A stretch of DNA of 64,000 bases from Ruditapes philippinarum. Lineage: Eukaryota. Location: the NCBI RefSeq assembly GCF_026571515.1, contig NW_026859650.1, forward strand, positions 496,001 to 560,000, written 5' to 3'. Shown piece after piece: positions 20,954 to 47,330 of this stretch. The notes under the pieces are model-generated. The model saw only the letters and a program-made list of their open reading frames with translations, was not told the DNA's origin and ran no database searches. Position 1 is the first letter of the stretch, and each line of letters starts with the position of its first letter. The position numbers and the translations under genes are program-made.

Positions 20954-23900
20954 ACAATCGTGTCTCTTAACTTCTAAAAAGCTCAGCTCAACTATGTAGC
21001 ATAGAAAACATATATTTCTCCGTCTTGATTAGACTACTTGATAGGAATTCATCTAAATACCTACCACACACAACATAATGTTTATTATACATAACCAACC
21101 GACCCAATATTTATAATACACCTTTCATAAGGTAAACAAAAATATGCACTTTGGTATGATACCACACTTTGATAATATGTAACATTTTGTAAGAGTAACC
21201 CTGAGGCTGTAAGATATAATGGCCATGTCTGTGTCAGTAAGTGTATTTTATGGTCAGGTAAAATAACTTGGCCAACTTGCAATTTGCTTACTTCCGCTAT
21301 ACAAACCAAATGAAACAAAGACTTAGGTATTTTACATTCTCTCTAAAACAAAATAAATGTATATGGCATTAATTTTGTTAATTCAGGTAATCACTATTCT
21401 AAATCATACAATTTGACTTCTTCCATTTTTGCAATAAAAAAAGGTTTTGTCAGTTACCTAATCCAGTTTAAATGTTTACCCTTCTTACAATAAACATGAA
21501 CATTGAATTTGCTTTTTAGGGGGGAGTTGAGCCTCAGAGAACAACAAGTATTGCTACTTATATAAGTACAATGTACCAATCTTAGATGTGAATGCCCTAC
21601 TGGCAACATGTCACCTTATAACGATCGAGAACTTCAAAAGAACCCGAGCTATAATCTGACAACAAAGATATCTTCCCACTTATATGATTTAATACTAAAG
21701 CAGCATCGTAAGAACATTGCTGCGCTATAGATTCATCCAACATTTCCACATGAGCAGATTTCCCAATTAAGTTATATTGATCATGTTCTTGTCACCAACT
21801 AATTCAATAGAGCCATCACGATTGTCAACCGGCATCAATATACCTGGCTGCATTAAAATCTATCATGATTTCCACTCAATATTCAATATCCATGCTCCAA
21901 TGCAAGGAAGCAAAATTGCTGGCATGCATGTACTGCACCAGATTGCACTGAAATGCACACTCTCTAGAAGTTCTCTAAGTTCTAAGTTCCTTGAAATGTA
22001 AGCATTTATGAAAATGATTGCCAATAGAATTCACAGGTAAAAACACCGGCACAAATTTTGCAACAAACACAGAGAGTTCGTTTGTATAATTGCGAATATC
22101 ATAATTAAAATGCTTAGTTCTTATCATAAACTCAGAGGTACTGTTGATTTAGAATTTAATTACAGATTTCAACATTTAACTGCATATCTGCAAGCTAAAG
22201 TCCATGCTGCGCTTTATTGAAACATTTCTTTGCAAAGGAAATGTATTTATGCAATAATGGTTCTTTTCAGGACCTAAGGGACTTTTGTTTTCCCATAAGA
22301 TTTTATTTTTAAATAAATAAAGCTATAATATGTAATGATACATTTGTATCAAATTTATAAACATTAAAATTATGTTGTTTCTGAAAAGTTATGGTTGATT
22401 CTTTAAAGACTTGTTACAGACATTGTCCCCATTAATATTTAACGCATGAAAATTGTCCATAAACTTTATGAAATGTTCCAGAACAAAATATTATTTACTA
22501 ACTTGAAAAGGATTTTTACCATTTAGCAATAATTCTGTGCCTGCGTCATTTGCTCTTCAGGAAATAGACAAACATATTTCTTTCATATGGGTATTTTTGG
22601 AAGTATTCTTTTTCAGAATCAAAATAAAAATTTTTTTTGCAGCAAATATATCATAAGCTTTATACACTTTAATCTTCCATTCAAATTTGTTTCTAAAGGT
22701 TTGACTTTGAAATTAATTCTACTTATTTCAGTTTAACAAGCAATGTTACTTCTACTTATTAAATGTTTCCTTTTTTTCTTTTGTATCAAAAGCTAATTAC
22801 AAGACAAAAGTCATACACTGGAAATGTCATTCATAAATGTACTCATCCCTTTTCAGACTCTTCACTTTTTTGAAAAGAGAACCTTGTGTTTCAAAGTTCA
22901 AAGAATGCAAGAAATTTGATACAACTTAACTTAATTATAGTGGAGTAAAAACAGCCCCCTGTCTAATACCAGATTTCGCTAAATTCTTTTTATGTAAACT
23001 TAGATTAAATGAGGCTAATTTAGGAATTGGTAAAAGGCATGAAGACACTGATAAACAGTCTCTAATTTCAAATGCCAAGTGATTGACTTCATTAAACACT
23101 CATTTTTTCACTCAAGAGAACATCATCTTGGGGGAGATTTTAATTCTGGTTTTTCTATCCTGTGAATTAAACCAGTTATTTTCATTGATCTTTCTGCCTA
23201 ACATTCAATCAACTTCAGACACATCTTTTTTCTTCTAATTAGGTGACTTCTGCAAAGTTGCATCAATTTTCTGTTACTAACTTATATGCTTCCTTAACAC
23301 TGACATGAATGATTTCAAAAACAATAAATCAATTAAACCTGTGACAGGATTTCCATTTAAGCTATATATCATGTGCAAACAGACTCCACATATAAATGTG
23401 AAAATGAACAGAGCATATTTTCTTTAATTTAATTTCCAGTCTTTAAGCAAATATTCTCTAAATAGACCAATAATCAGGTACCTGATGTTTTAAGGTCACA
23501 TGGAGCGGGACATCTGGTAAACTTGTGAACAAGATTTCTGTAAGTTCGATAAGTGCTTTCTCAGACATACGATGCCTGCATTGCTTTGGAGTTTGGCTTA
23601 AACAGATCAAAACTTAGCGCTTCGTCAGCTTTGCTAATCTTCTGGGATAATTGAATAAATACTAACGCAATAACAAACCTTTTTGCTAGATAAATTTTTG
23701 TTTTTACAACAAACTGTAACAGATAACAATTTATTACGCCAATTTTGAAAATAGATTGCTTCTTTTCCATCAATTTTCATTTCAACTGCAGTAAATTTAT
23801 TTAAGTTTGAAAAATTTATAGCTGCCGTGCACACAAACAGATGTTTAAAGTGTATTTTCCTATTGGAAACTTAAAAATCATCAAATTTGACTTGTGTGTG

Positions 23901-24648
23901 AAACTGCCTTGATAAAAATGACACCATACTTAAACTGTTTGAATCTTTTATTAGTTAAAAATTTGAAATTAATCAAAATGTTGAAGAAAAAAACAACACC
24001 TCTTGACACAAAATTCCATCATCATAAAATTTTCATTTCCATCACAAAAACTCAATCTTTTTATCAAAAATTAGAAGACTAAATTTTAAAAACTATTAAA
24101 GTTTGCACAGTATATAATGACATGTTTCAGATTATTACCATTCAAAACCTGAGAACATAATCATCACAAAAGAAGTTATAAACCATCATCTTATGCTAAG
24201 AAAAAGAGAGAGATTTTTATCATGCTTTATAGTACATAACAACTTAATTCTATATGTTGAAGATTGAGGTTGAACAAGGTTCTTTTTTTTCCCCTTCTCA
24301 CAAAATGGCTAAATAACTCAACAATACATGTCAAGCACAAGTCGTATTCAGATACCATCTCCTTTCGTTTCAAAAAGATTTCGCAGATAATGTCACCGAT
24401 TGAAAAATTTAAGAGATTATAGATATCAAAAACTAACAAATTATATGGCAGCATTCAATAGAGTCAATCATAACTTTACAGGCTGAAGTGAAACACTTGT
24501 ATGTTTCACTACCTAGTGTTCAATTTCTTTTAAAATTACTGACAATACCACACACAGACATTTTTCTTTCTTTTTCGGTTGTCACTGAGTCCTGAAAGAG
24601 CTTATAATGCACTGCTCTCAGACCGACATCTTTGAAAAGCTGGTTTAT

Positions 24649-24872
24649 TTAACCCTAACCTTACTTAAATATCTTAAATGAACTTGTCCATCTTTCATTC
24701 TGGACAAAACCATTCATTATTTTAAGGGGAAAATTTTAAAATAGTTCTAATGTGTACTAGAAACGTAACACATCCATGAACTTAATCCAGATTGCGATAG
24801 AAATGACGAGGCTATAATCTATTATGATAATGACACTGTAGTCAAGGGGGATAGAATTGTTAGCCAGCAGGT
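24649..24872 (+). mobile_element. Degenerate TTAA/CCCT-terminated MITE (piggyBac-like ends)
   Basis: Starts TTAACCCT...AATGAACTTGTCCATCTTTCA.T.TGGACA, resembling a recalled abundant bivalve MITE. Related remnants near 28850-29050 and 53890-54040. Confidence 0.55.
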
Positions 24873-26574
24873 AGTATAGTAACTCCTATGCTACAAAATG
24901 ATTACATTTTGTTGAGGCTTACGAACTAAATTCAAACAAATGAAGAAAAACGCAAAATGAATACTCTTACATTCTACCTTTGCTTCGGTATTCAGCTTGT
25001 TATTAGAAAAAGAAACATCCTTTTACATATTTTTACGTTTTTGTTTTTCAGTTTTTAAGTATTTTTAACCAAATGATGGAAATATATACACACATCTATA
25101 TATATAAACAAACAGCAAACAACCAACCAGAAAAAAAACATACAAAGTTAGTAGATTTGATTTATTATTACGAGATATCTTTGCATTAAAGGGCGAACAT
25201 AACAATCTGGAGATATTCTCACTTTTTGTTGATTTTTATCGAATCAGGCTCTCGTCTTTATTATATTCTTAGAGATTTAACATACTTTTCAATAAAGGCA
25301 CATAAAATGTACCCCAGGCTGTAATCCCAACTTCAAGAAAGGATTAGCTTTGCCGACCAGCAAGTTAATAATTTACTGCATATTATCATCCTCGGATCTT
25401 TATGCATTCTGCCACTCATCATTATATTTCATCATACCATTATTATAGTCCATCGATATAAGGTATATACTTCGACTTCTTAATACAGGAAATTTAGTGT
25501 ACATTAGAGCCAACGAGATCCATAAATTGTTTTTATATTTTTTTGGGAATTAACAATGACAAAACAATATTATTCTCAGATCATATTACTAAAATATACC
25601 TTAGCTCAAGAAGCTCTAAATGTTAAATAAATAAGTTTTATGCTAAAAATTAACTGGACAAATCATAATGGCTCTCCTTGTAGTCATACACAAATCGGAT
25701 ACGCACAGACTTATAATTCTTACACGACTAAATTACCATAGAGGGCAAGTTGAATTTTGTAACCTGTATACTATGAGATCCCTACAGAATCCAAAACCAC
25801 CCAACAAAACTAGCATGCGCTAATTAAGAAACAGAATAATAATGTTATGTCTTAAAAAAATTTCCCATTTCACAATAAACAAGGACAAAAGTGAATGTAC
25901 AATATACTTGTAAATTGAAATAATTTTGTTATCGAGCAATAGTCACATAATTTTCGACTGTTTATAGAAGGACAGTTGAATCTGATCGATATGATGGCAT
26001 GTGACATCAGTCATATGAGCTTGATCTTTTCAAAAATGTCTTTCCTACTTCATGATATGCGTTGCGAACTTTCTCCATTTTTGAAAACTGCTTAACCTAA
26101 TCAAATATATTCAAACATGTCAGAAAAAAGAGACAGACCATATATATTTCTGTCAATCCGCGTTTCTTAAGCTTTTAACCACCCACCCTTTATGTGCATT
26201 AAAAAACACTTAATTGCAATTACAAATATTCAGCAGCAAATATAGATAAAATAAAGAAAATTGTTCTCTAAACTTAAAAATCTGTGAAAATAACAAACCA
26301 ATTTGCACGTGTTTAAAATTCCCAAGATATAATAGCGAATAGTTCTATATTCCGCTACTCTTTGAAAGATACTCAAAGCCCTTACTATGAGAAACCAGAT
26401 ATATCTTGAAAAATCTTGGCTGTGAAAGACTACTGTCTGCTTTGTTGCAATAAAATGCATGTTATATGACTAGAAAATGTTGGCGAAATAATAGATATAC
26501 CACCTTCCTTTCGTCAGACAAAATAAAACCTATCCAAAATATAGGCGTGCAAAAATAGTTTAGACAAAAGATGT

Positions 26575-26825
26575 TTTTTATCTTACAAATTTCTTTACTC
26601 TGACATTCTTGGACATTAAAGTGATCTGAAATTGCAATAGCACACCTTATTACTCACACCTAAAAATGTTAACTTCCCTTCTATTACCCAAAAATTAATA
26701 ACATCCATAAAGTTATAGGGTCCGAGTATACATACACTGTCTACAACAATTTTTGAACCCTTCCTTGATACATATACATAGTTTTTTTCTTACAAATTTG
26801 TTTAATCTGACATTCTCGGACATTA
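26575..26825. repeat. Dispersed direct duplication of about 44 bp
   Basis: TCTTACAAATTT.TTTA.TCTGACATTCT.GGACATTA near 26581 and 26788. Confidence 0.75.
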
Positions 26826-28129
26826 CAGTCGAAAGCGTAGTTCAACACTTTTTCTACATCGCAAAATACCCTAATATATCTATCTTATTTTTGTTGTTTA
26901 CATTATTTCTTTATAATTTTTCTTAGAACCTTTTGCTCCCCCAGAACTTCAGTCAGAGAAATCATTATCAATTCACATTATCATTAGAGAATGAATATTC
27001 AGTAAGTTTGTTTGGTTTAGAAGCACTTTAAAATAAAATTGAATCTGAGGCAATCATTTACTTAAAAAATTGATCGCCTTGTATATACAGTACATTTCTA
27101 CAACAGACTACCAACACCTATATAATTACAACACTAGTTTAATTCTAGATAGGCTATGCTCATTAAAGCCCGGAGATAGTTTATTTCATATATCATGGGT
27201 TTACTATGTGAGAAATGAAAAATACAATATCATTTGACCCAGTTACTTTTAAATACAGATTGGGTCTCGTATTATTTTGTCACCTTTAAGAATCATGATT
27301 GACTATATCCCAATTTAAAAACTTGTAGTTCATAATTACTAAAGTTCGCCATCAATTAGGTATGCCATCAAGAATTAGCTGTTCTAGTTTTCAGAAAACA
27401 AAATATTACCGATATATTTTAATATTGCTAAATTACTCTGAAATGTATGAAAAAGAAAAAAAAACATTTTAATTTTTCATTAGTAGCTGCCTGGATCATT
27501 CTGAAATTCAATATTAAGAACAATTTTGTGAATTGTTTTATGAGCCCAATTAAACAATCTAGTGAGATAGAATGCGGGCATGATACATAGTCTCTGCCTT
27601 CACCTGTTCACCTCAAGAAAAAGTTCTTTTAATTGTCTCATAACAAACTACCTGTGAATATTTCTCATTAAATGAATTTATGAGGATGAGTCTTATTTTT
27701 AATAAAATCACCACAATAAACATCAATAAAATAAAGTTTCGCTGTCTTTACAAATCCACATTAATGTGTAATGCCAATGACTTAGTAAGAAATTAACTCA
27801 TACACACCTCTGTCCATATTACATGTTGTGGATCTAAAGTACAATCCTATAATGGAGTTTGATGAATTATGGATCGATAAATAATACCAGTTTCTCAATA
27901 AGAAATCTAAGTTCAAGGATTCATAAATTCGACAATAGTATTGCTAGCATTAAATTTATCCTTCTCAAAAAATCGATTTAAAAAGAAAGAAAATAATGAA
28001 GTTTGAAGATAAACAACCTTAAGAAATTAAAGAATATTAAAAAAACGAACATCTTTTCCTCCTAAGAAACAACTTATAAGTTCAAGGGATGTTTGAGGAG
28101 TAATACTAAAATTTTTTTTTTGCTAGATA

Positions 28130-28745
28130 TTACCGTGGAATGTCCAGACATAATGATTGTGCTATGGTACCAAGATAACTTAATATTTAAAGTTTAGAGT
28201 TAAACATCCTTGAAAAAAAAACATTTATAGTTGAAAAAGCTTGAAAAATTTAAATCAGAAATCTTGAAATTCAGCATATTTGTGGACCACGATATGCGCA
28301 ACCAAAATTTCAACATAGTAGAAAAGTAAGTATATCTGGTGAATAATCATCCAGGAGCTGTCCGATCATACCATTATTCAAGTTTCATAAAATCATTTTC
28401 AAGTACTTTTGAGAGATTCAATCACTGAAATTGTTTCCAGTACGTTAGATTTAAATTTGCTTCCATAATATTCAACCATCTTGTATGCCCATAGCAACCA
28501 AATTTCAACATAGAATAAAAATAAAAACGGATTCATAATCTCCATACTGCCACTCAGATATCCAATATATCAAGTTTCCATAAAAATATTTCGAGTTAGC
28601 TTGTGCAATTTACGCGGCATCAAGTTTGGTGACGACGAGAGCTGAAGCGGAGACTGACAGACACAGCAGACGGTACAGACAGACGACGAGGGTAAACTAA
28701 AGTCCTCTCCGTTTAAAATCGTTTTGGTTAGGGTAACGTAATTAA
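28130..28745 (-). mobile_element. Helentron-associated (HINE/DINE-1-like) non-autonomous element, degenerate
   Basis: Two internal units of about 200 bp (GCAACCAAA(A)TTT(T)CAACATAG near 28298 and 28494; CAAGTTTC(C)ATAAAA), an ACAG/GACG microsatellite at 28650-28690 and a decayed terminal hairpin. Confidence 0.6.
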
Positions 28746-31700
28746 TGGTTATTATCTTAAACGCAACCAAGTTCAAATAATATAAAAAAACTTATCACCT
28801 ATTTTGAACTATGCGTGCTTAATATGAAGACATATCATCAACTTTACAACTATTCCTAAATTACTAAATATCTTAAATGGACTTCCCTGGTTATACAATC
28901 TGGCTACCAAAAGCCAGATCGTCTGATAGTGAATATTTAAAAACAATATGTACGAACTAAATATTATAATCTAACTGACAGACTAAATACATTGATCGGA
29001 CCTGCACAAACGGTGTGTGTCGCAGACTGTAGATTCTGTCCTCCACAGCAGATATGGCTTATATAATAAAAAATATTCTACCGAACTCCTATTGACCCGG
29101 AGATTATTACATAGATAAGTACATATAAATTATAGTATAAAGATATGAATAGCTATATTCATGAGTCATAGATTTAACAAGTATGACTACACACACTAAG
29201 CCTTCGTTTCCTTACCAAATCATCAATGTCACACACATTTTCTACCTATATTTATACTAATTGTTCCTAATGTATTACAAACCATAACTTTTATCAAATT
29301 TTCGTTAAAATAGTGTTCCACGAAGTCTTTCAAGTCGAAAGGCACTACAAAGAGTACATATCTACTATTCATCTTTGCATTCATTCTGTGCTAGAGACCT
29401 ATTACTCTAAAATCTTGACGCATCTGCTAACGTATTTAGCGATAACACTCTACTAACGAACGACTATTGTAAAAATGTAAAAATTAATAGACACCTACGA
29501 TTAAATTGATAAAATCGTTAAATGTACAATAAAAACTGACATACACTAAAAGTGCAAATATAAACCATGTAGACGAAGACAATATAAAACTCCACCTTAA
29601 ATAAAAATATGATTCTACATTTACTATCGACACAAAAACTACTTAATAATCATTATTTAGCGTACCTCTGATTATTTTTACTGACACAATACACACACAT
29701 TAGAATCTATATGTACGTAAAGAACTTCTTTTTCCACAAACACTAGCACTATCATTCATAAAATTTCTTACAATCATAGACACAAATCTTATCATAGATA
29801 CGCAAGCGTGTCTGTCTGTGCGTATTATTATGAATACTTGATGTAGATTAAAATCACTCTCAATTCCAAAACATATTCTCAGGCTTACCAAATTGTAAAG
29901 AAAAATTCTAGTTATTCATATTGTGAAATTCACTTTGTATCCTTTGTTACATCTTTTTTGTCTCTGCCGCCTCAAAATCATTTGTTATACTGATTTAGAT
30001 ATACTATAAAAATTCTATCAACTTGTTATGGGCACGGAAGTGCAATATGCAAACATTACAGACCTTAATTCCATCCATACCTGAGTTAGTCTTAAACAGC
30101 TACACTTCTACAACTTAATCAGATCTTTTAATCATGCAGTATCTGCATTATCCTGCATCAAAGTGCAAATAGCCCAAAGATCTATCGCTTTTATTTAATG
30201 GAAAAACAAAAATGCACTCAGATTATCTCACTAGTAAACCAATAACATTAAATATCTGTTATATGTTCTTACATGCTTATAGACTACTAAATGATCTACA
30301 GTTAATAAAATTGTATCACGTAATTTACTTTTATAATTTATCCCCATGAGTAAACTGTATATTTAAATAACTGCAGCCGAAAAACATGATATTCCACATG
30401 ATGAATATACGCCTATGAGGCAACATATCACAGTAGTTATAATCTCAGTTGACAAAGTTATCTATATAAAACATGTACTATACACCAACCTGTGCAAATA
30501 AACTATTACTATGCCCTGAAGCCTTTGTGCAACAACAACAACAACAAATATTTCAAAGAAAATATACTAAGAAGATATACACATATCTGTGACAACAAAC
30601 AAAAAAACATATAAAACTTCCAATTACAAGACTTTTGCTTAATTCTTATTTGACAATTTTAACAGATATAATTTTCACAAAATTTTTACTTAATAGATCC
30701 CCACCTATTATACAAAAATAAATAGTTCTGCTATATAGCTACAACACAGCTTATATTATTCATTACTTTTAGTTATGCGAAAATTCAACACCAAATTCGT
30801 TGATTTGGTGACCAATTATTACATGTGCAGGACAAAGTCTAAAACTGTATCCGTATAAAGTATCTCGAGTCACAAATAGCAATTGTGGCAATCTGTTTCT
30901 CGAGAAAACTTATTAGCATAATTCACTAACGATGTCATCTGATCGCACATTCTATATGGTCCATAAACCTTAACAACAGCACTAAGAGTACCTGTAGATA
31001 GAAGAATGTCATAGCCTGATTTAACGTCTTTACATATGCACTAATTTGTATGAAATAGTAAATAAATTGCAGCTACTGTGTCAGTTGAAATTGACCATTA
31101 ATGACCCAGAGTTGTAAAAACTGCGACATTCAGAGCAGTGTACATGCAGCCCCGACCATCAATCAAGCTGTTAAAAAATGACAGCTGCTCATACCACCTA
31201 ACCCCAACTGACCGCACTACCTGCAAGAGATTAACAACATATATAGTATAATTAACGCCTATGCTCGAATGTCCAATATGTACATCATAGATAAATCAAG
31301 ATTGACTATTTGCTAAACATACACCAATATTCCGCAATAATTACCACAGTTCTCATCCATATAATAATATTCTACTTTCTCATACATTTTATTACACCAT
31401 GAAAACTCATTCGTCAGATGTACTGTGAATATATAATTATGCAAAGACTATAGCGTGGTTACTTTCGTTAAGAATAATGAGTTATACATTGCTGTTACAC
31501 AGCTAAGCATTTATATTGTTCGTGAGTAAACGACAGGAGTGAAAACAAAATCCCTTAAAGAACACCACAGACAAAAAAAAAACTTTTGAAAATATTAACC
31601 TTTTCATAAGATCTTATATGCAACTAGTATGATAGTCATCATAATACCAAATGACAATGAAAATTCAGATTACAGCTAAAATGACTAGAATCTTTCTTAG

Positions 31701-38500: not shown

Positions 38501-41172
38501 ATATTCAGAAATACATTGAAAATTGTATATTTGTGCTATTCTAATTCTATTCTTCCCAATACATGTATGAATCAAAAGCACTGTTCATTTTTGGGACATT
38601 TTACACTATTCATTTCAAGTAATCATTCTGGGAAAACAGAGCGAGTGCATGATCTGAAAATTTTTGCATATAGGTTTTTGCCAAGATCTACATCAAATAG
38701 AATATCAAATTATCAATCTTGAAATATTATTTCCATTCTGGGTCATGTCAAAAGCCTCAGTGGAGTCCCTTTAAGTAATTCATATATGACATTGACCTTT
38801 TAGATGACTGACCATCATGGTCAAATACTGAATTTTAACTTATTGTCATATTGTTAATATCTATTTGTTTTGTGTTCGCATATTAATTTATAAGAAGAAT
38901 TCCTTGAAAAATATTTACCTCATTTTGACTGGAAAAGTACATATATTATAACAACCTTAGCTAAAGGTAGTAATAAGAGTATGAGTCTGAAGTTTACAAT
39001 ATTTATGATTTCTCTTTGGTTACAGAGAGAAACAGTTTTTCTTTTTTGTATTTTATTATAAATATTGAAAATGTATAATTTGCTGTCAAGTTGTGTGTAA
39101 CTAAATATGTAGTACATTTTACATTAATCTTCTGTTCTTAGTGAATTAATCTATAGAGTAAGTGTATAGGTAAAAGAATCTCTGGTAAAAAAATATTTGA
39201 AAATCTTAAAAGCACAATATAATGTGTGACTGTCAGAGATAAATTAATTTTGTTAATTTCTTTAGAAAGGTCAAATATGTGTTCAATTATGTTTTTAATG
39301 ATGTATTTAGAGCATTTTTAAATGTTTAACCACTGAAAAGAGTAACACTGAACAAACAGTCATGTGTTGTAAAGGTAGCAAAATGTGAGCAAAGTATTAT
39401 TTTGACTTACATACAAAATATGAATTAATGTAATTATACCAATTGCCAGATAACTTATCTACATGTACATGGTCAATGAGTACATGTAACTATTTGAAAC
39501 TGCAACAAGATATGTAAAAGGAAAGTTTGAAAAATAAAAATGTTATCTTTTCTAAGGCTTAATGGACCTTTAAAAAGTTATTATTTAATATATATTTAAT
39601 GCAGATATCATATGTGCAGAAAAAATTGTGGTAAAATGATATAACTTGCTTGTTTAATACTGATTACTTGTGCATGATCTTTAATATATTATAAGACATT
39701 AAATTTTTGTTTGCTTTTTTTTACGGGTGACTTCTGTCATGTTACTTTTTTGATAAACAGTGAAGGTACAGTAGGTTCAGACAAGTTATATACATGTATA
39801 CAGGACAAGATAGCTCAAACTGGTAGTTTGTTATAGCAAAAAGTGATGACGTTTCAGCCATGAAAGTCTTCATCGTGAATGATGATCATCATGATCCTAT
39901 TTATAGATTCTTTTGCATTATCTGTAAGGAAGAGGTTTCTGCTGCAAGAAAGAAAAAAATTCATACAGGTTTGTCATTTTTTCAAATAATAAATTTAGGT
40001 CTGTTGTTGATTGCATGTACATTAAAAAAAGGTCTTTCCTTATCAATAAGGTTCTAAAAGTTTGTCATCTTGTGGTAATTACTGATCCCTTAGTAAATTA
40101 ATTACAGTCATCAAACTTTTTAAACATGTTTACTGTAATCACTTGTTGCATGGTGCATATGCCTGAAGCCTAGGATTTTGTGACAAATATCATCATGTTT
40201 TACTATTAGATTATGTGGAAAAATGATTAATAAATGAATTATAGTTTAAGGTTTTTCCAAAGTTTTCAAAACTTGCACCGATGTTGTTGTAATATCAGGG
40301 TTTTTACTTTCTAATGTTTGACTGATATCATTGCAGACCTTTACTAATTCAAAATCATGACAAAGTATTTAAAATTAAAATTTCCCTTTCCAGAATTACA
40401 TTAATTCATTGTAGGACTAGTAATCATACAAAAAAAATATATATTACTGTAAACATGTTACACTAGAAAATTAAAAATTGAAATGTATGCTCATAGTGAA
40501 ATGATCCATTCAAAAGTTAAATTTTCAATTATTTTTCTGAAAAACAATAACAGATTATGCCCTGCTTCTAGTTTCTTGTATTTGAACAAATTATGCTGTT
40601 TAATTGTTTTACTAAACCTTGCTCCACTTTGCAGTAAGAAGTTGCCGCCCACTCTGTTCAAATGAAGCTGTCTGAAGTACCAAGTAGAACAATGTATTAT
40701 TTCTGGAACAACTTAATTGAAGTGAAGCTTACTATGTGAAGGAGTTTTTCTGTATTCAAAAGGAAACTTCAGCATACAGAATACCAATTTAGGTATAGTA
40801 CACTTTAAATTTTTACTGTTATCCATCTAAAGAAAGCATGAGATACAAAAATAAGCGATAATAATTATTTACCTGACACCAGAATACACTATGGTTCTGG
40901 CTTGCAGTTAAGAAGTGGATGTTCTATTCTTTGTACATTCAAGCATTAATTGAAAACCAATATATTTGTCCTATCATTTAATTTGAAAAAGAAATTGACA
41001 ATATTCTTGGTTTGTTTTTCAGCAGCCATTTGTAAAAGTTAATTAAGTCTGTATATCACACCATCCATTGCTTTTGATTTTCTTGTGACCAGAAACTAGC
41101 ATTTTACATAGTGGTGCAAGCTTACTATGATAATTCATGCAAAGATATGATAAAGATATATATATATAATAT

Positions 41173-41435
41173 CCCCAGTAAAAATGTCAGTGGAATACCA
41201 GTGGAATACCACTGTATTCCAGTGGTAACCATAAATCCACTGGTATTCCACTGGAATACTACATAATACCAGTGGAATAACACTGCAATTTCAGTGGTTA
41301 TTATAATTCCACTGGTATTCCACTGGTTTTTTTTCACTGGTAATCTAATATTGAGTAGTGGTATGCCACTGGTCAAATTTATTTCAGTTGTAAACCACTG
41401 GATTTCCCAGTGTAAACCACTGGATTTCCAGTGAA
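41173..41435. repeat. Left subterminal array of CCACTGG / CAGTGGAATACCA motifs
   Basis: Many direct and inverted copies of ccactg / cagtgg with gaatac / gtattc. Confidence 0.9.
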
Positions 41436-42791
41436 CTTGGTGACTTCAATAATATATATACAATTTAATAAGGACACTTCCAGTGGACTAATTTTTACCA
41501 TTGGTATGTACAATTACGAACATGAAAAAAAGGTTCCATCAAAACTGTCTCTGATCATATTTGTGTGTATACATGTTGGTAATCTGAGGTCAAAAATAGA
41601 ATTCTAGGGTAAACATCATAATCAATATAGTCATTACAATTAAGTAATTGAATTATTATTTATTCACAGTTAAAAACAATTGAATAATATAATGTTTCAA
41701 TTATATGATAGAAATACAATCATAGTATAAATTTACTGGATGATTAGACAGTCATGGTTCAAACCAGTATATCGCCCCTGTGAAATAGTGTTCTTGAAAT
41801 CATGTACTTTTCAATACATTTAAGAACAGTTCATTAACTGGTCCTAAACACTTCATAATGATTGTTCAAGAACTTTAATATGTTCATGAACAGTTCTTCA
41901 AGCTTGTTCATGAACTGTTCATTGGCATAAAAAGAACGAAACCAAATTCTTTAAAGTTTCATGAACTTAGTTCAATGATATAATCAAAATTATTCAGTCA
42001 TTGTCATACATGCCATGGACAATCCCTGAAATAAGGTGTCTGTCCCGGAGATGATTTATGTCCCAGTAAAAAAAAAAAATCTAAAATAATCTACTCTGAA
42101 GCAAGAAATTTTACTTTTTTATATAATTTTATTGTCAAGTTTTTGTAAACTTATCTAGAACGCTAATAACAAACGATTATCCCCGAACAGCATTGCAATG
42201 GTGACACTAATCCTTTGATTGGTATATCTACGTGCCCCTTCCAACAAACAATTATCGACAATAATTTTGATTAATTAAAAGATTAATTACCCCTTGTGGC
42301 TTCCTGAGTGAAGGTGTCATACACTGGCCAACTGGACAGTATAAATTTAATCTGCCTGGAGACATTTATTAGTGGTCAAACACCGTGAAAATTACCGCTA
42401 AATATGAGGTGATAAAATCTACAAGATTCACCGAATGTTTCAGGTAAATGACGTGGGTAATTGTCATTACTTAACAAAGCTTTATTCTTTTCTGTGACTG
42501 ATTGAATTAACGATGCCTAAACACTTAAAAAAGATAGAAAAACAGTTAATAATTATTGACATTCTGACTTTGTTTATGGTGTCATTAAATTTGCAAGTTG
42601 TAATTACCGGTTATTATAGGGCCTATAGGTTGTATGCCACTATGTAAATTAAAAAAAAAAAGAAATACGTTTGCTGATCAATGCCCACCTTCAAATGAAA
42701 GTGTCCCGGAAATGAGTCTAAAAATTATGGCATGTAACTCATTGTATTGACGGCAAAAACAACGGAATTACACGAAATTATGAAAATCGAG

Positions 42792-42865
42792 CACATGTTA
42801 CTGACGTAGTACACATGTCACTGACGTAGTACACAGGTTTATTGCGTAGTACACAGGTCTATTGA
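42792..42865. repeat. 20-bp tandem repeat x 4 just upstream of the element's internal gene
   Basis: CACATGT.ACTGACGTAGTA twice, then two variants (CACAGGT.TATTG...). Confidence 0.85.
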
Positions 42866-42882
42866 GCGCGCAACATTCAAAG

Positions 42883-43020
42883 ACGGCAAAAACTTCGTCT
42901 CATACCAACAGTGAATTGATGATATCATCTCCCCAATAAAGATATACAACGAGGAAGGTGAAATTGCTCAAGCAAATTATCAGAAAAAGACCTTCAAAGC
43001 TGCAATCGGTGATATTCACA
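42883..43020 (+). pseudogene. Probable first exon of the decayed transposon-borne BEN gene
   Basis: Mutated start context AAGACGGCA (compare AAGATGGC). Open stretch IDDIISPIKIYNEEGEIAQANYQKKTFKAAIGDIH ends at a consensus donor A|GTGAGT (43021). Confidence 0.5.
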
Positions 43021-44696
43021 GTGAGTATTATCATAAATGCACCAGTTGATTTTTTTTCCAAACTGAACCGGCGTGTTTATGACTCCTCCAAGAAAAAAAT
43101 GAAGAGTCTATAATTAATTCAATGACCTTTCTTCACTTCTTAAAGCATTATTTTGTAACAACTTGCCGACTGTAACAATACAAATAATAATTGTATTTCC
43201 AGCTCATTCCTAGTTACAGTTTAGATAATTAAACCTTACTGGAAATATTGCGTAAACGGACATTTGTCACATATTTTCGCGACCCGTTTTTATTTATTTC
43301 TTTGTTGTTGAAAAGGATCGATATAAAATGAATAAAAAACAAAGCATCGTTGAAGATTGAAGACAGTTCTGCTTCCCTGCAGGCAATTATTTGCTAATGC
43401 CTTCTAAAAGATCATATCTAGTTTAAAATAGTTTTTTGAAAAATGCATGGTAGCAAGTTTTTTTTATCCCCAGATAGTTCAATACCCTAGTATGCAGACA
43501 GTTCACTACCTAAGCAATTTTCCCTTATATTAGAAAAAAAGTTTTTCATAAAGAGACAATATTTTTATATCACCCATTAATTTATGTAGTTTTATAATGG
43601 AATATGATCAACAAGGAAAATAGCACATGACTGTATTTTTAAATCCAAAAATTTAATTGGCACAGAAATCATGTTTTCTATTTGTTTGTTTTTTTGTTTT
43701 TTTTGGGGTGTGTGTTGGATTTAATCTCTAAGATTTCTGTGCATTTATAGGAATTATTGGACCACTAAAAAGTTGTGTGGGCCACCAAAATTTATAGGTC
43801 AGTGGTCCAGGATACGGCCTAGCTAAAATAGCTTGTCTTTGACACTGCCTAAGCTTATACTAGAGAATCTGAATACTGGTCCATTAAACTAAATCCCAAA
43901 TGATGATTTGCAAAGAACATAAATAGCATAAACAGTGTCATACTTGTAGCACTGACCTGAATACAATTGAATTCTCAGGCATTGAATTTAAGATTTTTTG
44001 AATTTTTGAATTTACTGGCCCGTATTCCAGTTTACAATTTATTCTACTATATATTTTACTAAATTCTCTAAAATTTACACTGGTCATGGTAATCTGTTAC
44101 TGTATTAGTAAGGGGCAGGATGTGAAGTGGTTGAACATGCTTGAACAAGATATTTTGAGTATTAAAACATTACTTAGAACATGCAAATTGAAAAAATTAT
44201 AATGATACCGTTACGGTTTGTCGATCAGGATATTTTAAAGATATTGGTCAATTGTTTATGATGTTAGAAGTTTCTTGATTGTGATTAATATTATAGGTCC
44301 TGCTGACAGTGTCCAATATGAAAGTTCATCGAAAAGGCAGGAACTGCTAGGGGTTGTAATGTGTAGTTGAGGCTAGATCTGACGGGTAAGCAATATAGTT
44401 GAGGTTACAAGGACCCAATTTTACAATTGTCTACAGTAGAACCAGATATTTTGTCATGGCAAAAATTCCCGAAATCTTAATTCAGTCTAATTTCACGAGG
44501 ATTAAAATTCGCATAATTAGCCTTTTCTTCTTAAATATTAATGAAAAACTGATTACCCTGACACTGGGGTATAAAAATAGGTTTGAAGGGTACTATGGAA
44601 ACGCATTTTTTCGTAACATTTGTGTGATGTTTAAAACTGTCATTTCAAACACTAGACATTATATTGTTGTTTTTTTTTTTGGTGTTTCCAAACTAG

Positions 44697-45055
44697 ATGG
44701 GAGGATGAGTGCAGAAGCCTGCATAGAAAGATTTGGCGCATGGAGGAGCGGATTACTGCTTTAGAGTGTCAGAATACAAAAGTGGAGGACCCCGAATTAT
44801 AAGCTGTGGAACATGTAAGTGATACTCAAGAAGTCTTGGTTACATTAGCAAAGACTATCTTCACTGTGGAGGAACTTAGAAACCACTCTAGGACTGGAAA
44901 GATGACCCAATAAGTGCAAGGATTACCCGAGACCACCACTTGAACCCATGAAACTCAGCAATTTTTAAAGACTAGTGAGGAAGAAAACCGGTGTATCAAA
45001 AGAAGTATTTAATAAAAAACTAGAGAACTTACAAAAGGTCATCAGAAGGAAATAA
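44697..45055 (+). pseudogene. Terminal exon: coiled coil plus BEN domain, with 2 internal stops and 1 frameshift
   Basis: After a poly-T...TAG acceptor: WEDECRSLHRKIWRMEERITALECQN...*...LVTLAKTIFTVEELRNHSRTGKMT/NKCKDYPRPPLEPMKLSNF*RLVRKKTGVSKEVFNKKLENLQKVIRRK*. This fits the BEN pattern L..hF+.EEL...S.TGK....RP.L(D/E)P.KL. Stops at 44800 and 44966; +1 frameshift near 44908. Confidence 0.78.
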
Positions 45056-45669
45056 ATCACAAAATAAGTGAAACATTGGAAACTAAACAAACTAATTTCA
45101 AGTTCTTGGTTTTTGCACTTTTGAAAATCAGCAAGCTGTATTGAAGAAACTATTTCTTAATTCTTGTTTAACAAAGATGTGTAGTTTTTAAATTTTACAT
45201 GTAGTTTTACATGTTTGTGGTTTACTTTTTAACAATATAGCTTAGAGCTTATGTTGAGTACATATTGTTTAGACTTGTCAGTCCACAAATTGATTGGTAT
45301 CATCTGTCTGCTCTGGTCTTGCATTTTTCATGAATGTGAAATAATGTAAATGTAGTTTAGGAACTGTTCATGAACTGTAGTACTTGAACTGTTCTTGCAC
45401 TTTTTGTGTTTTATTAAAACAATATTATTAACTTTAGGAAATCTTATTTGGGAGTAAGAGTGCATCTTTAACAAGGAAATATTATAAAACAAAGCAGAAG
45501 TGAATAACCAAAATAACTGTTTAGTTTAGATCTAAAAAAATGTGTTGAGACTCAATACTTACTATTATATATATATAAAGCCAACAAATGTATATAAAAT
45601 ATTTGCTATTATATCTGCTCTTTGGAATGATTTTGTATTTTCAACTTATTCAACTACTATATCCAGTGA

Positions 45670-45730
45670 TTTTTATGCCCCCGAAGGTGGGCATATTAAT
45701 TAAAATCGCACTGTCCGTCCGTCCGGCTCT
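45670..45730 (+). mobile_element. Terminal fragment of a HINE/DINE-1-like element nested in the 5-kb transposon
   Basis: TTTTT, then hairpin ATGCCC-CCGAAGGT-GGGCAT, then (GTCC)n. Confidence 0.7.
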
Positions 45731-45734
45731 GTAT

Positions 45735-46197
45735 TTGGTAGTATTCTACCAAAATTTACCGCTGGTATTTCAGAGGAATTCCACTAGAAAACCAGTGGTA
45801 AACTTTTAATGGAATACCACAAAAGTTTACCGCTGGTATTTCAGTAGAATTCCACTGGAAAACCAGCGGTAAACTTTTAGTGGAATACCACCAAATTTTA
45901 CCGCTGGTATTTCAGTGGAATTCCACTGAAATACCATCGGTAAAATTTGGTTGAATTCCACTGGTATTCCAGTGGAATTCCACTGAAATACCAGCGGTAA
46001 AATTTGGTGGTATTCCACTAAAAGTTTACCGCTGGTATTTCAGTGGTATTCCAGTGGAATTCCACTGAAATACCAGCGGTAAACTTTTAGTGGAATACCA
46101 CCAAAATTTACCGCTGGTATTCCACTGAAAATCCACTGGAATACCAGCGGTATTCCAGTGGTATTCTAGTGGTATTCCACTGAATTTTTTACTGGGG
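45735..46197. repeat. Right subterminal array of tandem palindromic units (TACCGCTGGTATTTCAGTGGAATTCCACTGAAATACCAGCGGTA)
   Basis: Perfect 32-bp palindrome at 45905-45936 inside a 60-bp near-perfect palindrome at 45891-45950; the unit is repeated several times. Confidence 0.92.
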
Positions 46198-47330
46198 ATA
46201 TATAAGAAATATGTCTTCGATTTTACTGGTAAATTGTTATGTATGGAACACATTGTCTTTATGATGTTGAATATATTCAGTGCCAGATAAACAATTACTT
46301 GCAACATGACAAATATATTTTATTTTCAGATATTTGTAGCTTCAGTTATGGGAGTACACAAGATTAATTGAACTGGAATCCCTTCAGACGTTGACATAGC
46401 TAAATTTCGCAGTTTCAACTATAAATGGACATTAAATTAATATACATTGGTTTTATTTTATACATGTATTTGTTAATATTTTTGTTTTCCATTATTTCCC
46501 AATATTGTTAATTTTGGATAATATAATGCCACAGAAAACTTGTCGGTCTTGGAGTATGGCTGTTTAACAAAAACACTACAGATTGTTCGTCAGAACAATG
46601 AAATTACAGTTTTGCTTGTTATAATGAACTAATTTACATAAATATATAATTTTTGTAAATATGAAGAAATTTGGAAACATATCATATAATGGGTATTTGT
46701 TTCTTTTGCATGCAAGATCCAAATATATTTCATAGAGTGAACAGCAGATTTAATATTTTCATGAATGGCATTGAAAAAACATATACAATGTATAACTTTG
46801 CCACAATGTTGGTAAATTGGAGGCTGCTATTTTACTGTGACTGAAAGTAGTTCAGATATGACACCTTATTATGTCCGAGGTCTATAGCCCATCATACAAG
46901 CCAAAGAGAGCAGATTTTTTTTTCTGTGTAGAATCATTAATTTTCAATGTTCAGATTTGAAAGTGATTCTGTCATATTTCCTGAATTTGTTTAATTTCCT
47001 TCATGATTTGCAAATATTAATTATCTACTTTTTTATTTTATCACATTTTTCTGAGAAATAAATGTATTTCCCACAAAATTTCTGTTTGTTTATAGGCTTT
47101 TCAATCTCATTCAAATAAGGGTCTGGCTACTTTTGAAATTATACTTTATTGTGAAATAATCTAAAAGTAATGTCATTTTTTTACTGTTGAAAAGAATGTT
47201 ATAAGTTATGGTGTTCAATTGATTTCTGAAGGACAACTTTTGAAGGAAATGAAGTGAGTTGATATTTGCCATGTTAGTATCAAAAGGCAGATTTAGTTTT
47301 CAATAAATTATTTTTGATGCTGTTATGCCC

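What the first reader, a model, noticed from the sequence alone, without database searches (positions are those of the whole stretch)
41173..46197. 5-kb TIR transposon carrying a spliced coiled-coil plus BEN-domain gene and large palindromic terminal arrays: candidate accessory-protein/target-site system
Seen: matched TIRs, ATAT flanks, hundreds of bp of CAGTGGAAT(A/T)CCACTG repeats at both ends, and a decayed multi-exon gene with a recognisable BEN motif that the ORF track misses because of stops and a frameshift. No transposase is visible. Known: BEN domains are sequence-specific DNA-binding domains (Insensitive, BANP, BEND3), and plant CACTA (TnpA) and Harbinger (Myb/SANT) elements use a second DNA-binding protein that coats subterminal repeats. 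Inference: this family may use a BEN protein as its TnpA-equivalent, with the palindromic arrays as its binding sites. This copy would be an internally deleted derivative, since the two surviving exons have mismatched phases (1 and 2).
Basis: partly seen in the sequence, partly recalled or inferred. Interest (0 to 1): 0.8.

Follow-up and report, generated by a model that had tools for sequence, protein, structure and literature searches.

The report
Dead chimeric clam transposon, BEN-gene relic
This is a broken, two-layer jumping gene in the Manila clam that carries the remains of a BEN DNA-binding gene, which in a 24-kb relative sits intact beside a CACTA-type transposase.

Summary
The element is real: window 41173-46197, about 42-nt terminal inverted repeats, and a 2-bp target duplication (AT), not ATAT. 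It is one of about 10 copies of family A in what is almost certainly the Ruditapes philippinarum RefSeq assembly.

It is chimeric. The outer arms carry the GGAATWCC/CCACTGG arrays. They enclose a second element, family B, which has its own terminus at 41775 but lacks its last 342 bp. The BEN exon belongs to B, whose arms carry TTCATGAA repeats instead.

The gene is dead. 27 of 29 aligned copies share one stop codon, the A lineage adds a second, and the window copy adds a frameshift and a roughly 760-bp deletion. RNA reads show no splicing.

Both ends of B are 71% identical to the ends of a 23.8-kb element, C12075:6596-30411, with a CA duplication. That element holds Transposase_21 reading frames and, pointing the other way, the intact beta-domain/coiled-coil/BEN gene XP_060563109.1. 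In all, 5 of 17 Transposase_21 hits have such a neighbour.

So the idea of a BEN partner protein holds at family level. The pairing with the outer arrays does not hold, and DNA binding is untested. The scan already noted CACTA-plus-BEN elements elsewhere in this genome.

The parts
41171..41172 (.). Left copy of the 2-bp target-site duplication (AT)
   Evidence: All 8 A copies with both ends have identical 2-bp flanks. The window copy sits in an (AT)n stretch, which made the flank look like ATAT.
41173..41214 (+). Left terminal inverted repeat of outer family A (CCCCAGTAAAAA...)
   Evidence: (pair I9).
41173..41774 (+). Left arm of family A, with GGAATACC/CCACTGG-type short repeats (arrays 41188-41433)
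   Evidence: A genome search finds this arm at full length at 10 places including the window, all of them chimeric copies, plus one partial hit.
41775..41970 (+). Left terminus (CCCCTGTGAAAT) and left arm of the nested family B element, with TTCATGAA repeats at 41883, 41907 and 41958
41970..41972 (.). Deletion point: about 580-760 bp present in 7 of 8 sibling A copies is missing here
   Evidence: RNA-run reads from sibling copies run on unlike the window at 41970 (table 7).
42792..42865 (+). About three tandem copies of a 20-bp unit containing TGACGTAG, just upstream of the first exon relic; possibly a promoter element (inferred)
   Evidence: The function is inference only.
42915..43012 (+). 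Relic of the first coding exon (N-terminal beta domain); no ATG, with a stop just upstream in frame
   Evidence: 43% identity to P0002 residues 23-58, E 0.005.
43730..44285 (.). 556-bp stretch present in A copies and absent from B copies; part of it (43861-44196) is a high-copy repeat
   Evidence: B copies skip 43730-44285. table 2: depth up to 424 and 951 against about 10 nearby.
44698..45052 (+). Relic of the last exon (coiled coil plus BEN domain). Stop at 44800-44802 is shared by 27 of 29 copies. A 1-bp insertion in the C run at 44906-44908 is found in this copy only. Stop at 44966-44968 is specific to the A lineage.
41775..45408 (+). Body of the nested B element, which lacks the last 342 bp of B including its right terminus
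45409..46197 (+). Right arm of family A, with a palindromic array at 45750-46186. Positions 45668-45730 are a piece of an unrelated high-copy repeat.
46156..46197 (-). Right terminal inverted repeat of family A
46198..46199 (.). Right copy of the 2-bp target-site duplication (AT)

Best explanation
Window 41173-46197 is a dead, non-autonomous, chimeric cut-and-paste DNA transposon.

Its core is a copy of family B. B is a 4.35-kb deletion derivative of a large two-gene transposon, best represented by C12075:6596-30411. That 23.8-kb element encodes a Transposase_21 (CACTA/EnSpm TnpD-type) transposase on one strand. On the other strand it encodes a protein with an N-terminal beta domain, a coiled coil and a BEN domain.

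B kept both ends of that element: CCCC...GGGG termini and subterminal TTCATGAA repeats. It also kept the BEN partner gene and lost the transposase. The partner gene then decayed.

An old B copy became enclosed by the arms of a different element, family A, which has a CCCCAGTAAAAA terminus and GGAATWCC/CCACTGG arrays. B's last 342 bp were lost. The chimera then spread to about 10 places, making 2-bp target duplications.

Shown: the structure, the copy families, the duplications, the homology of the ends, the adjacency of the two genes, and the decay.

Inferred: (1) mobilisation in trans by transposases of related elements; (2) that in autonomous elements the coiled-coil/BEN protein dimerises and binds the palindromic, CATG-core subterminal repeats, as TnpA does in En/Spm; (3) how the chimera arose, either as a B insertion into an A-type element followed by a deletion, or by recombination.
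For: Family A:
- The left arm occurs at full length at 10 places. The right arm occurs at 13 places, full or partial.
- All 8 copies with both ends have unique flanks and identical 2-bp duplications.

Family B:
- 18 right ends are at least 92% identical. The 8 fetched copies are 95-99% identical to L043 over their aligned stretches.
- The termini are CCCCTGTGAAAT...ATTTCACAGGGG. Five of 8 copies have perfect 2-bp duplications.
- The window holds B's left terminus at 41775, and its homology to B stops at 45408.

BEN assignment:
- PF10523 scores 28.9 bits on an open sibling frame and 39.3 bits in the six-frame genome search.
- HMMER finds 48 relatives, including XP_060563109.1 of Ruditapes philippinarum.
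- The best fold matches of that protein's model are solved BEN domains: BEND6, Insv, BANP and Bsg25A, with target TM 0.57-0.74 and probability 1.00.

Link to an autonomous element:
- B's right 342 bp match 71% just after that gene, at C12075:30075-30411, and at three paralogous places. The termini are aligned.
- B's first 136 nt match 71% at C12075:6596, which starts CCCCTGCGAAAT. Eight TCATGA sites lie in the next 290 bp. The flank is CA on both sides.
- A Transposase_21 hit (50.6 bits) lies at C12075:10173-10631 on the minus strand. The gene lies at 22601-29701 on the plus strand.
- 5 of 17 Transposase_21 hits have a hit of this protein family within 12 kb in divergent orientation. My own arithmetic gives about 0.03 expected by chance.

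Repeats:
- All 11 TTCATGAA and all 19 TCATGA sites of B lie in its first 413 or last 430 bp of 4,350. Shuffles give 0.18 and 1.5.

Precedent:
- Insv binds the palindrome CCAATTGG as a dimer and needs multimerisation domains (passages of PMC6317261).
- NAC1/NACC1 BEN domains bind ACATGT/CATG (abstract starts of PMC7764960 and PMC11472053 in the listing).
Against: - The termini are CCCC...GGGG, not the 5'-CA..TG-3' said to hold for most CMC-type elements (passage of PMC12730594).
- Both genes were shown to lie inside one bounded unit only for C12075. Its transposase is in at least two overlapping frames, so it is either broken or has an intron.
- The C-terminal frames gave no Pfam hit.
- A second terminus-like TTTTGCAGGGG lies at C12075:8350 and is unexplained. 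I take it for chance: no TCATGA repeats lie beside it, and its flank is AC rather than CA.
- No autonomous partner with A-type arms was found.
- No evidence of any kind shows that the BEN protein binds the repeats or acts in transposition.
- Between the A and B lineages the exon is barely more conserved than its flanks (3.7% against 5.1% substitutions). pN/pS is 0.38, resting on only about 11 differences per pair.
- RNA reads give no spliced joint.
Confidence: 0.7

Rival explanations
1. One reading: the BEN protein is the accessory protein of this very element, and the CAGTGGAATTCCACTG arrays of the outer arms are its binding sites.
For: The arrays are real, palindromic and confined to the arms. 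Every copy with these arms contains the BEN exon. BEN dimers are known to bind palindromes (PMC6317261 passages).
Against: The BEN exon lies inside a nested element that has its own terminus at 41775. The free copies of that element, and its 24-kb relative, carry TTCATGAA repeats and no GGAATTCC arrays. The gene carried stops before the A copies spread.
Confidence: 0.07
2. The BEN-family gene is a passenger or a host gene. Either it was captured by these transposons, or the elements insert near such genes. It plays no part in transposition.
For: RefSeq annotates the intact copies as ordinary uncharacterised genes. Non-autonomous A and B copies spread with a dead gene. There is no clear purifying selection between the A and B lineages. 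Relatives also occur in fishes.
Against: 5 of 17 Transposase_21 hits have such a gene within 12 kb, always in divergent orientation. In C12075 both genes lie between homologous termini with a matching CA duplication. The deletion derivative B kept the gene next to the right end. The partners at C13513, C10405 and C12075 differ from one another (43-58% identity to P0002), as expected if each gene travels with its own element family.
Confidence: 0.15
3. The partner protein acts on chromatin or on the host rather than on the element's ends. For example, it could tether the transposition complex to marked chromatin through its N-terminal beta domain, or repress the element's own promoter. The subterminal repeats would then be bound by the transposase.
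For: The N-terminal region is predicted to be all-beta, with weak Tudor-like fold matches: KDM4A, probability 0.4-0.6, on a model region of pLDDT about 50. Known BEN proteins are repressors and insulator factors (PMC6317261 abstract).
Against: No test was made. The CATG core of the repeats resembles known BEN targets (abstract starts). The N-terminal model has low confidence.
Confidence: 0.2

Closest known systems
En/Spm (CACTA) transposons of plants, with transposase TnpD and subterminal-repeat-binding TnpA; the CMC superfamily
   Same: - The autonomous relative encodes a Transposase_21-family protein and a second gene.
- Target duplications are short. Two bp lies within the 2-4 bp quoted for CMC (PMC4482050 passage).
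- Multiple short subterminal repeats occur in both arms.
- Non-autonomous deletion derivatives exist.
   Different: - The termini are CCCC...GGGG, not CACTA/CA..TG.
- The second gene is a separate, oppositely oriented gene for a beta-domain/coiled-coil/BEN protein. It is not an alternatively spliced TnpA; the TnpA details are recalled, not taken from a call.
- The host is a bivalve.
- The window copy has no transposase.
BEN-solo and coiled-coil BEN factors (Drosophila Insensitive, human BEND6, NACC1)
   Same: - A C-terminal BEN domain preceded by a coiled coil.
- Best fold matches are BEND6, Insv, BANP and Bsg25A.
- The known targets are short palindromes: CCAATTGG and ACATGT/CATG.
   Different: - Here the gene sits inside a transposon next to a transposase.
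- DNA binding is untested.
- The N-terminal beta domain is not a feature of Insv, to my knowledge (recalled).
PIF/Harbinger and ISL2EU two-gene transposons (transposase plus a Myb/SANT or YqaJ protein)
   Same: A two-gene cut-and-paste design. ISL2EU also makes 2-bp duplications (PMC4482050 passages).
   Different: ISL2EU duplications are strictly AT within A|AT|T. Here they are TG, TA, AT, TT and CA. The transposase family is Transposase_21, not DDE_Tnp_4. The partner is BEN.
Chimeric or nested non-autonomous elements that move on borrowed ends
   Same: A foreign element enclosed between working termini is copied as one unit. All 8 copies with both ends have clean duplications.
   Different: Here the enclosed element belongs to a related family, with similar first bases at its terminus, and carries a partner-gene relic.

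Membership tests
CMC (CACTA/EnSpm-Mirage-Chapaev) DNA transposons | Encodes a DDE transposase of the CACTA TnpD / Transposase_21 type | tested here: not met
   The window element has no such reading frame. It is met only in the relative C12075:6596-30411 (PF02992, 50.6 bits), whose ends are 71% identical to those of family B.
CMC (CACTA/EnSpm-Mirage-Chapaev) DNA transposons | Target-site duplication of 2-4 bp | tested here: met
   2 bp in all 8 A copies with both ends, in 5 of 8 B copies perfectly, and CA/CA at C12075. The range is quoted from PMC4482050.
CMC (CACTA/EnSpm-Mirage-Chapaev) DNA transposons | Termini 5'-CA..TG-3' (CACTA-like) | tested here: not met
   The termini are CCCCAGTAAAAA (A), CCCCTGTGAAAT (B) and CCCCTGCGAAAT / CCCCTGCAAAAT (C12075). 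PMC12730594 says 'in most cases', so this does not exclude membership.
CMC (CACTA/EnSpm-Mirage-Chapaev) DNA transposons | [quoted passage not shown] | not tested
   The transposase of C12075 was fetched only in part (L059).
BEN domain (Pfam PF10523) | Score over the curated cut-off of 23.2 bits | tested here: met
   Sibling open frame L043:8610-8855 scores 28.9 bits. Sibling A copies score 39.3 bits in six-frame search, read through one TAA. The window's own unbroken pieces reach only 12.5 bits.
BEN domain (Pfam PF10523) | BEN fold | tested here: met
   Tested on the intact relative P0002, not on the window copy. The region 175-302 has pLDDT about 90. The five best Foldseek matches are all solved BEN domains, probability 1.00, target TM 0.57-0.74, although E is only 0.013-0.041.
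ISL2EU group of the PHIS superfamily | AT duplication within the target A|AT|T | tested here: not met
   Only 2 of 8 A copies have AT. The others have TG (3), TA (2) and TT (1). The feature is quoted from PMC4482050.
Tc1/mariner | TA duplication | tested here: not met
   Only 2 of 8 A copies have TA.
TnpA-like accessory system (a second protein that coats subterminal repeats) | The second protein binds the element's subterminal repeats and is needed for transposition | not testable with these tools
   Only the association is shown, together with motif clustering.

The most novel reading that the evidence does not exclude
Animal CACTA-type transposons of this lineage use a beta-domain/coiled-coil/BEN protein as their TnpA-equivalent. 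It would bind, as a dimer, the palindromic CATG-core repeats in both arms. Each family would have its own repeat and its own BEN variant. BEN-domain chromatin factors of animals (the BEND, NACC and Insensitive type) could then descend from such transposon partner proteins.
Probability: 0.3. Interest if true: 0.8.

Novelty: new variant of a known kind. Interest (0 to 1): 0.5.

Why it matters
The window copy itself is genomic debris. Its value is as a thread. It leads to a bounded 24-kb element in which a CACTA-type transposase and a BEN DNA-binding gene travel together, and to four further loci with the same arrangement.

My literature searches turned up no paper that links BEN domains to accessory proteins of DNA transposons. 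This rests on listings plus passages of three papers. The library lacks most subscription journals, and Abhiman 2008 and Dai 2013 were not held.

If the partner protein binds the subterminal palindromes, two things would follow. It would be a second, independent example of the two-protein logic of En/Spm. It would also suggest a mobile-element origin for an animal family of sequence-specific chromatin factors. That is directly testable with one recombinant protein and a few oligonucleotides.

The chimera also shows how a dead element can keep spreading on borrowed ends.

Tried and rejected
- ISL2EU and Tc1/mariner were rejected on the duplication sequences. piggyBac and Kolobok (TTAA) were rejected on the flanks; the TTAA rule is recalled.
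- The 3.4-kb extra stretch in B copy L044 holds no long coding frame, with one ORF of 70 aa or more. It is not a transposase.
- L057 (C14086) is an old B-like copy, 72% identical, with a decayed exon. It was not informative about selection.
- B ORFs other than the BEN frame gave no meaningful Pfam hit.
- L007, L008 and L010 hold other intact CC-BEN exons but no CCCC-type terminus within 1.5 kb.
- The 22-nt right-end pattern found right ends only, because the inverted repeat is only about 12 nt long.
- The 12-nt pattern gave 176 matches. The listing stopped before contig C12075, so it settled nothing. For C5185 and C169, which were within the listed range, no second site on the same contig appeared.
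- The left end of the C12075 element was then found by fetching 5.3 kb.
- Pfam on the two C-terminal transposase frames found nothing. The protein atlas gave only a lead, a cluster in which 20% of members carry DUF4218, at score 0.94.
- Tests for selection were inconclusive.
- RNA: runs X1 and X2 are only guessed to be RNA. In the raw RNA runs X21 and X23, reads lie on both strands and over the proposed introns as much as the exons. Depth is 2-9 over the BEN exon against 20-60 upstream. 72-76% of reads continue into unlike sequence, so most come from related repeats. There is no canonical splice joint.
- Supplements were closed. Additional files of PMC4482050 (its ISL2EU tables and figures) might refine the comparison of duplications.

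Full report
**The observation.**
The window is AT-rich (about 31% G+C) with no N. At 41173 and 46197 there are matched inverted termini: 12 identical bases (CCCCAGTAAAAA), then similarity out to about 42 nt. Both arms hold dense short repeats. TRF rows cover 41188-41433 and 45750-46186, and all 10 GGAATWCC sites of the element lie in the arms, against 0.1 expected from shuffles. None of the 16 ORFs of 40 aa or more looks like a transposase. I ran only one piece of these (window 44656-44799) through Pfam, and it gave no transposase family. The element is therefore real, and these features are not chance.

**Which genome.**
The window is G000:C8137:496001-560000 of a 1.41-Gb assembly. The protein XP_060563109.1 of Ruditapes philippinarum (P0002) maps to contig C12075 at 98% identity in its last exon. 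The source record gives its contig as 36,711 bases, which is exactly the length of C12075. I take the genome to be the Manila clam RefSeq assembly. An earlier scan note says the same.

**Copies and target duplication.**
The BEN exon (44690-45060) has 34 matches in the genome, 30 of them at 89-97% identity over the whole query. They fall into two groups.
- Family A. Ten places including the window have the full left arm, and 13 places have the right arm in full or in part. These copies align with the window from end to end.
- Of the 8 fetched A copies plus the window, 8 have both termini. Each of these sits in unique flanks with an identical 2-bp duplication: TG, TG, TG, TA, AT, TA, TT, AT. In the ninth, L055, my probe did not find the right terminus.
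- The duplication is therefore 2 bp of variable sequence. The window's "ATAT" is AT within an (AT)n stretch.
- Seven of the 8 fetched sibling A copies carry about 580-760 bp that the window copy lacks at 41970/41972. The eighth, L053, has a larger deletion at the same junction.

**The nested element.**
Family B copies match the window only from 41775 to 45408. They lack 43730-44285 and run on for 342 bp that the window lacks.
- B is 4.35 kb long. The 8 fetched copies are 95-99% identical to L043 over their aligned stretches.
- 18 right ends are at least 92% identical.
- The termini are CCCCTGTGAAAT...ATTTCACAGGGG. Five of 8 copies have a perfect 2-bp duplication; the other three differ by one base or are ambiguous.
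- The window holds B's left terminus intact at 41775. This is one of only three matches to CCCCWGTRAAA in 64 kb, against 0.1 expected.

The finding is therefore a chimera: A arms (41173-41774 and 45409-46197) around a B body that has lost its right end. A arms were found nowhere without B inside, apart from short partial hits. How the chimera arose is inferred. It could be a B insertion into an A-type element followed by a deletion, or a recombination.

**The gene relic.**
- An open 82-aa frame in B copy L043 scores 28.9 bits on Pfam BEN, above the cut-off of 23.2.
- Six-frame search gives 39.3 bits for A siblings, read through one TAA.
- The window's own unbroken pieces are too short to pass (12.5 bits).
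- HMMER over 1.84 billion proteins found 48 relatives. The named ones are uncharacterised proteins of R. philippinarum, an icefish and Amia.
- They share a coiled coil and a C-terminal BEN domain, and several share an N-terminal domain.
- The window's upstream exon relic (42915-43012) matches that N-terminal domain, with 43% identity over 37 aa and E 0.005. The coiled coil lies in the last exon together with BEN.
- A model of P0002 is confident only for residues 175-302. Its best structural matches are the solved BEN domains of BEND6, Insv, BANP and Bsg25A.
- The N-terminal part is predicted to be all-beta, with weak Tudor-like matches on a low-confidence region. "Tudor-like" is therefore only a lead.

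**Decay.**
- 27 of 29 aligned copies carry TAA between the coiled coil and BEN. The two most diverged copies, and the relative P0001, have TTA (Leu) at that position.
- The frame was therefore once open, and it broke before the A and B lineages separated.
- Eight of 9 A copies share a second stop, at window 44966-44968.
- The window alone has a 1-bp insertion at 44906-44908.
- The first exon relic has no ATG.
- Between the A and B lineages the exon differs by 3.7% and its flanks by 5.1%, while non-coding bins range from 1% to 10%. pN/pS is 0.38 on about 11 differences per pair. There is no convincing sign of constraint.
- Two raw RNA runs give reads over the whole element on both strands. Depth is lower over the BEN exon than upstream, most reads continue into unlike sequence, and no GT..AG joint appears at the proposed introns.
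- Expression of a spliced mRNA from these copies is not supported. Absence is not proven either, because only 4-6% of each run was read.

**The autonomous relative.**
I treated it as a lead and tested the idea independently.
- A genome search with Pfam Transposase_21 (PF02992) gave 17 hits over the cut-off.
- Five of them lie on the same contig as a hit of the CC-BEN family, within 12 kb and always in divergent orientation: C13513, C12075, C10405, C9764 (N-terminal exon only) and C8901.
- With 101 family hits in 1.41 Gb, my own arithmetic gives about 0.03 such neighbours by chance.
- B's right 342 bp match 71% directly after the P0002 gene, at C12075:30075-30411, and after three paralogues.
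- The alignment shows the same terminus (...CATTTTGCAGGGG) and conserved TTCATGAA repeats.
At 6596 the sequence CCCCTGCGAAAT begins a stretch that is 71% identical to B's first 136 nt, with 8 TCATGA sites in the next 290 bp.
- The flanks are CA at 6596 and CA after 30411.

C12075:6596-30411 is therefore a bounded 23.8-kb element. It contains transposase frames on the minus strand (8941-10631) and the BEN-family gene on the plus strand (22601-29701). The transposase lies in two overlapping frames, so it is either broken or has an intron. Its C-terminal part has no Pfam hit and only an atlas lead to DUF4218. A terminus-like TTTTGCAGGGG at 8350 has no repeats beside it and a non-matching flank. 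I take it for chance, but it is unexplained.

**Mechanism.**
Shown: B has the ends of a two-gene Transposase_21 element, and its partner gene, but no transposase. A moves on other ends.

Inferred: both are moved in trans.

The subterminal repeats are strikingly confined. All 11 TTCATGAA and all 19 TCATGA sites of B lie within 430 bp of an end. They are palindromic with a CATG core. Known BEN proteins bind short palindromes as dimers held by coiled coils or adjacent domains: Insv binds CCAATTGG (passages of PMC6317261), and NAC1/NACC1 bind ACATGT/CATG (abstract starts in the listing). I therefore think it most likely, though only at about one in three, that the partner protein binds these repeats as TnpA does in En/Spm.

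**Comparison and novelty.**
- The system works like a CACTA/En-Spm element: a Transposase_21 transposase, a 2-bp duplication within the quoted 2-4 bp range, subterminal repeats, a second gene, and deletion derivatives.
- It fails the usual CA..TG terminus. The window copy itself has no transposase.
- ISL2EU and Tc1/mariner fail on the duplication sequence.
- Four searches combining BEN domain with transposon plus transposase, CACTA, EnSpm or DNA transposon gave 9, 2, 0 and 6 papers. From the titles, and from passages I read in three of them, none describes a BEN partner of a transposon.
- The library lacks most subscription journals, and two key BEN papers were not held.
- The scan had already noted the CACTA-plus-BEN theme on other DNA of this genome. 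My loci and tests are my own, and I did not examine theirs.

**Verdict.**
The copy is debris, but it connects to an undescribed two-gene transposon design.

Noticed in passing
L043:4370-5204 and 9553-9901 (G000:C9182): This B copy is inserted in a tandem satellite with a period of about 179 bp. The same satellite phase resumes on the other side of the element, which independently marks the insertion boundaries.
   Followed up: partly
window 45668-45730: A roughly 60-bp piece inside the A right arm matches at least 25 other places in the genome at 81-87% identity. It is probably a fragment of an abundant unrelated repeat.
   Followed up: no
window 42013-42180 and 43861-44196: Contig depth in two runs rises to 94-456 and 74-951, against about 10 nearby. 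These stretches belong to high-copy repeats. The second lies in the 556-bp stretch that only the A lineage has.
   Followed up: no
window 42792-42865: About three tandem copies of a 20-bp unit containing TGACGTAG (CRE-like; the label is recalled) lie directly upstream of the first exon relic. They are also present in B copy L043 at about 7130-7200.
   Followed up: no
G000:C6218:17632-19256, C9317:295742-297378, C10405:69147-77333, C13469:431-805, C15759:74780-75154: A further subfamily of the same protein family has open first and last exons of constant length (104 and 127-133 aa) at five places. At C10405 it lies beside a Transposase_21 hit. The compact copies may be another non-autonomous family with an intact partner gene.
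   Followed up: no
L059, G000:C12075:8340-8350: A right-terminus-like TTTTGCAGGGG lies inside the 23.8-kb element, 590 bp beyond the end of the transposase frame. It has no TCATGA repeats beside it and its flank is AC. It may be chance or the scar of a nested relative.
   Followed up: partly
L057, G000:C14086:192600-198000: An old copy of a B-like element, 72% identical over about 2.9 kb, ends in CCCCTGTAAAAG. This shows that the transposase-less design with a BEN relic has persisted for a long time.
   Followed up: partly
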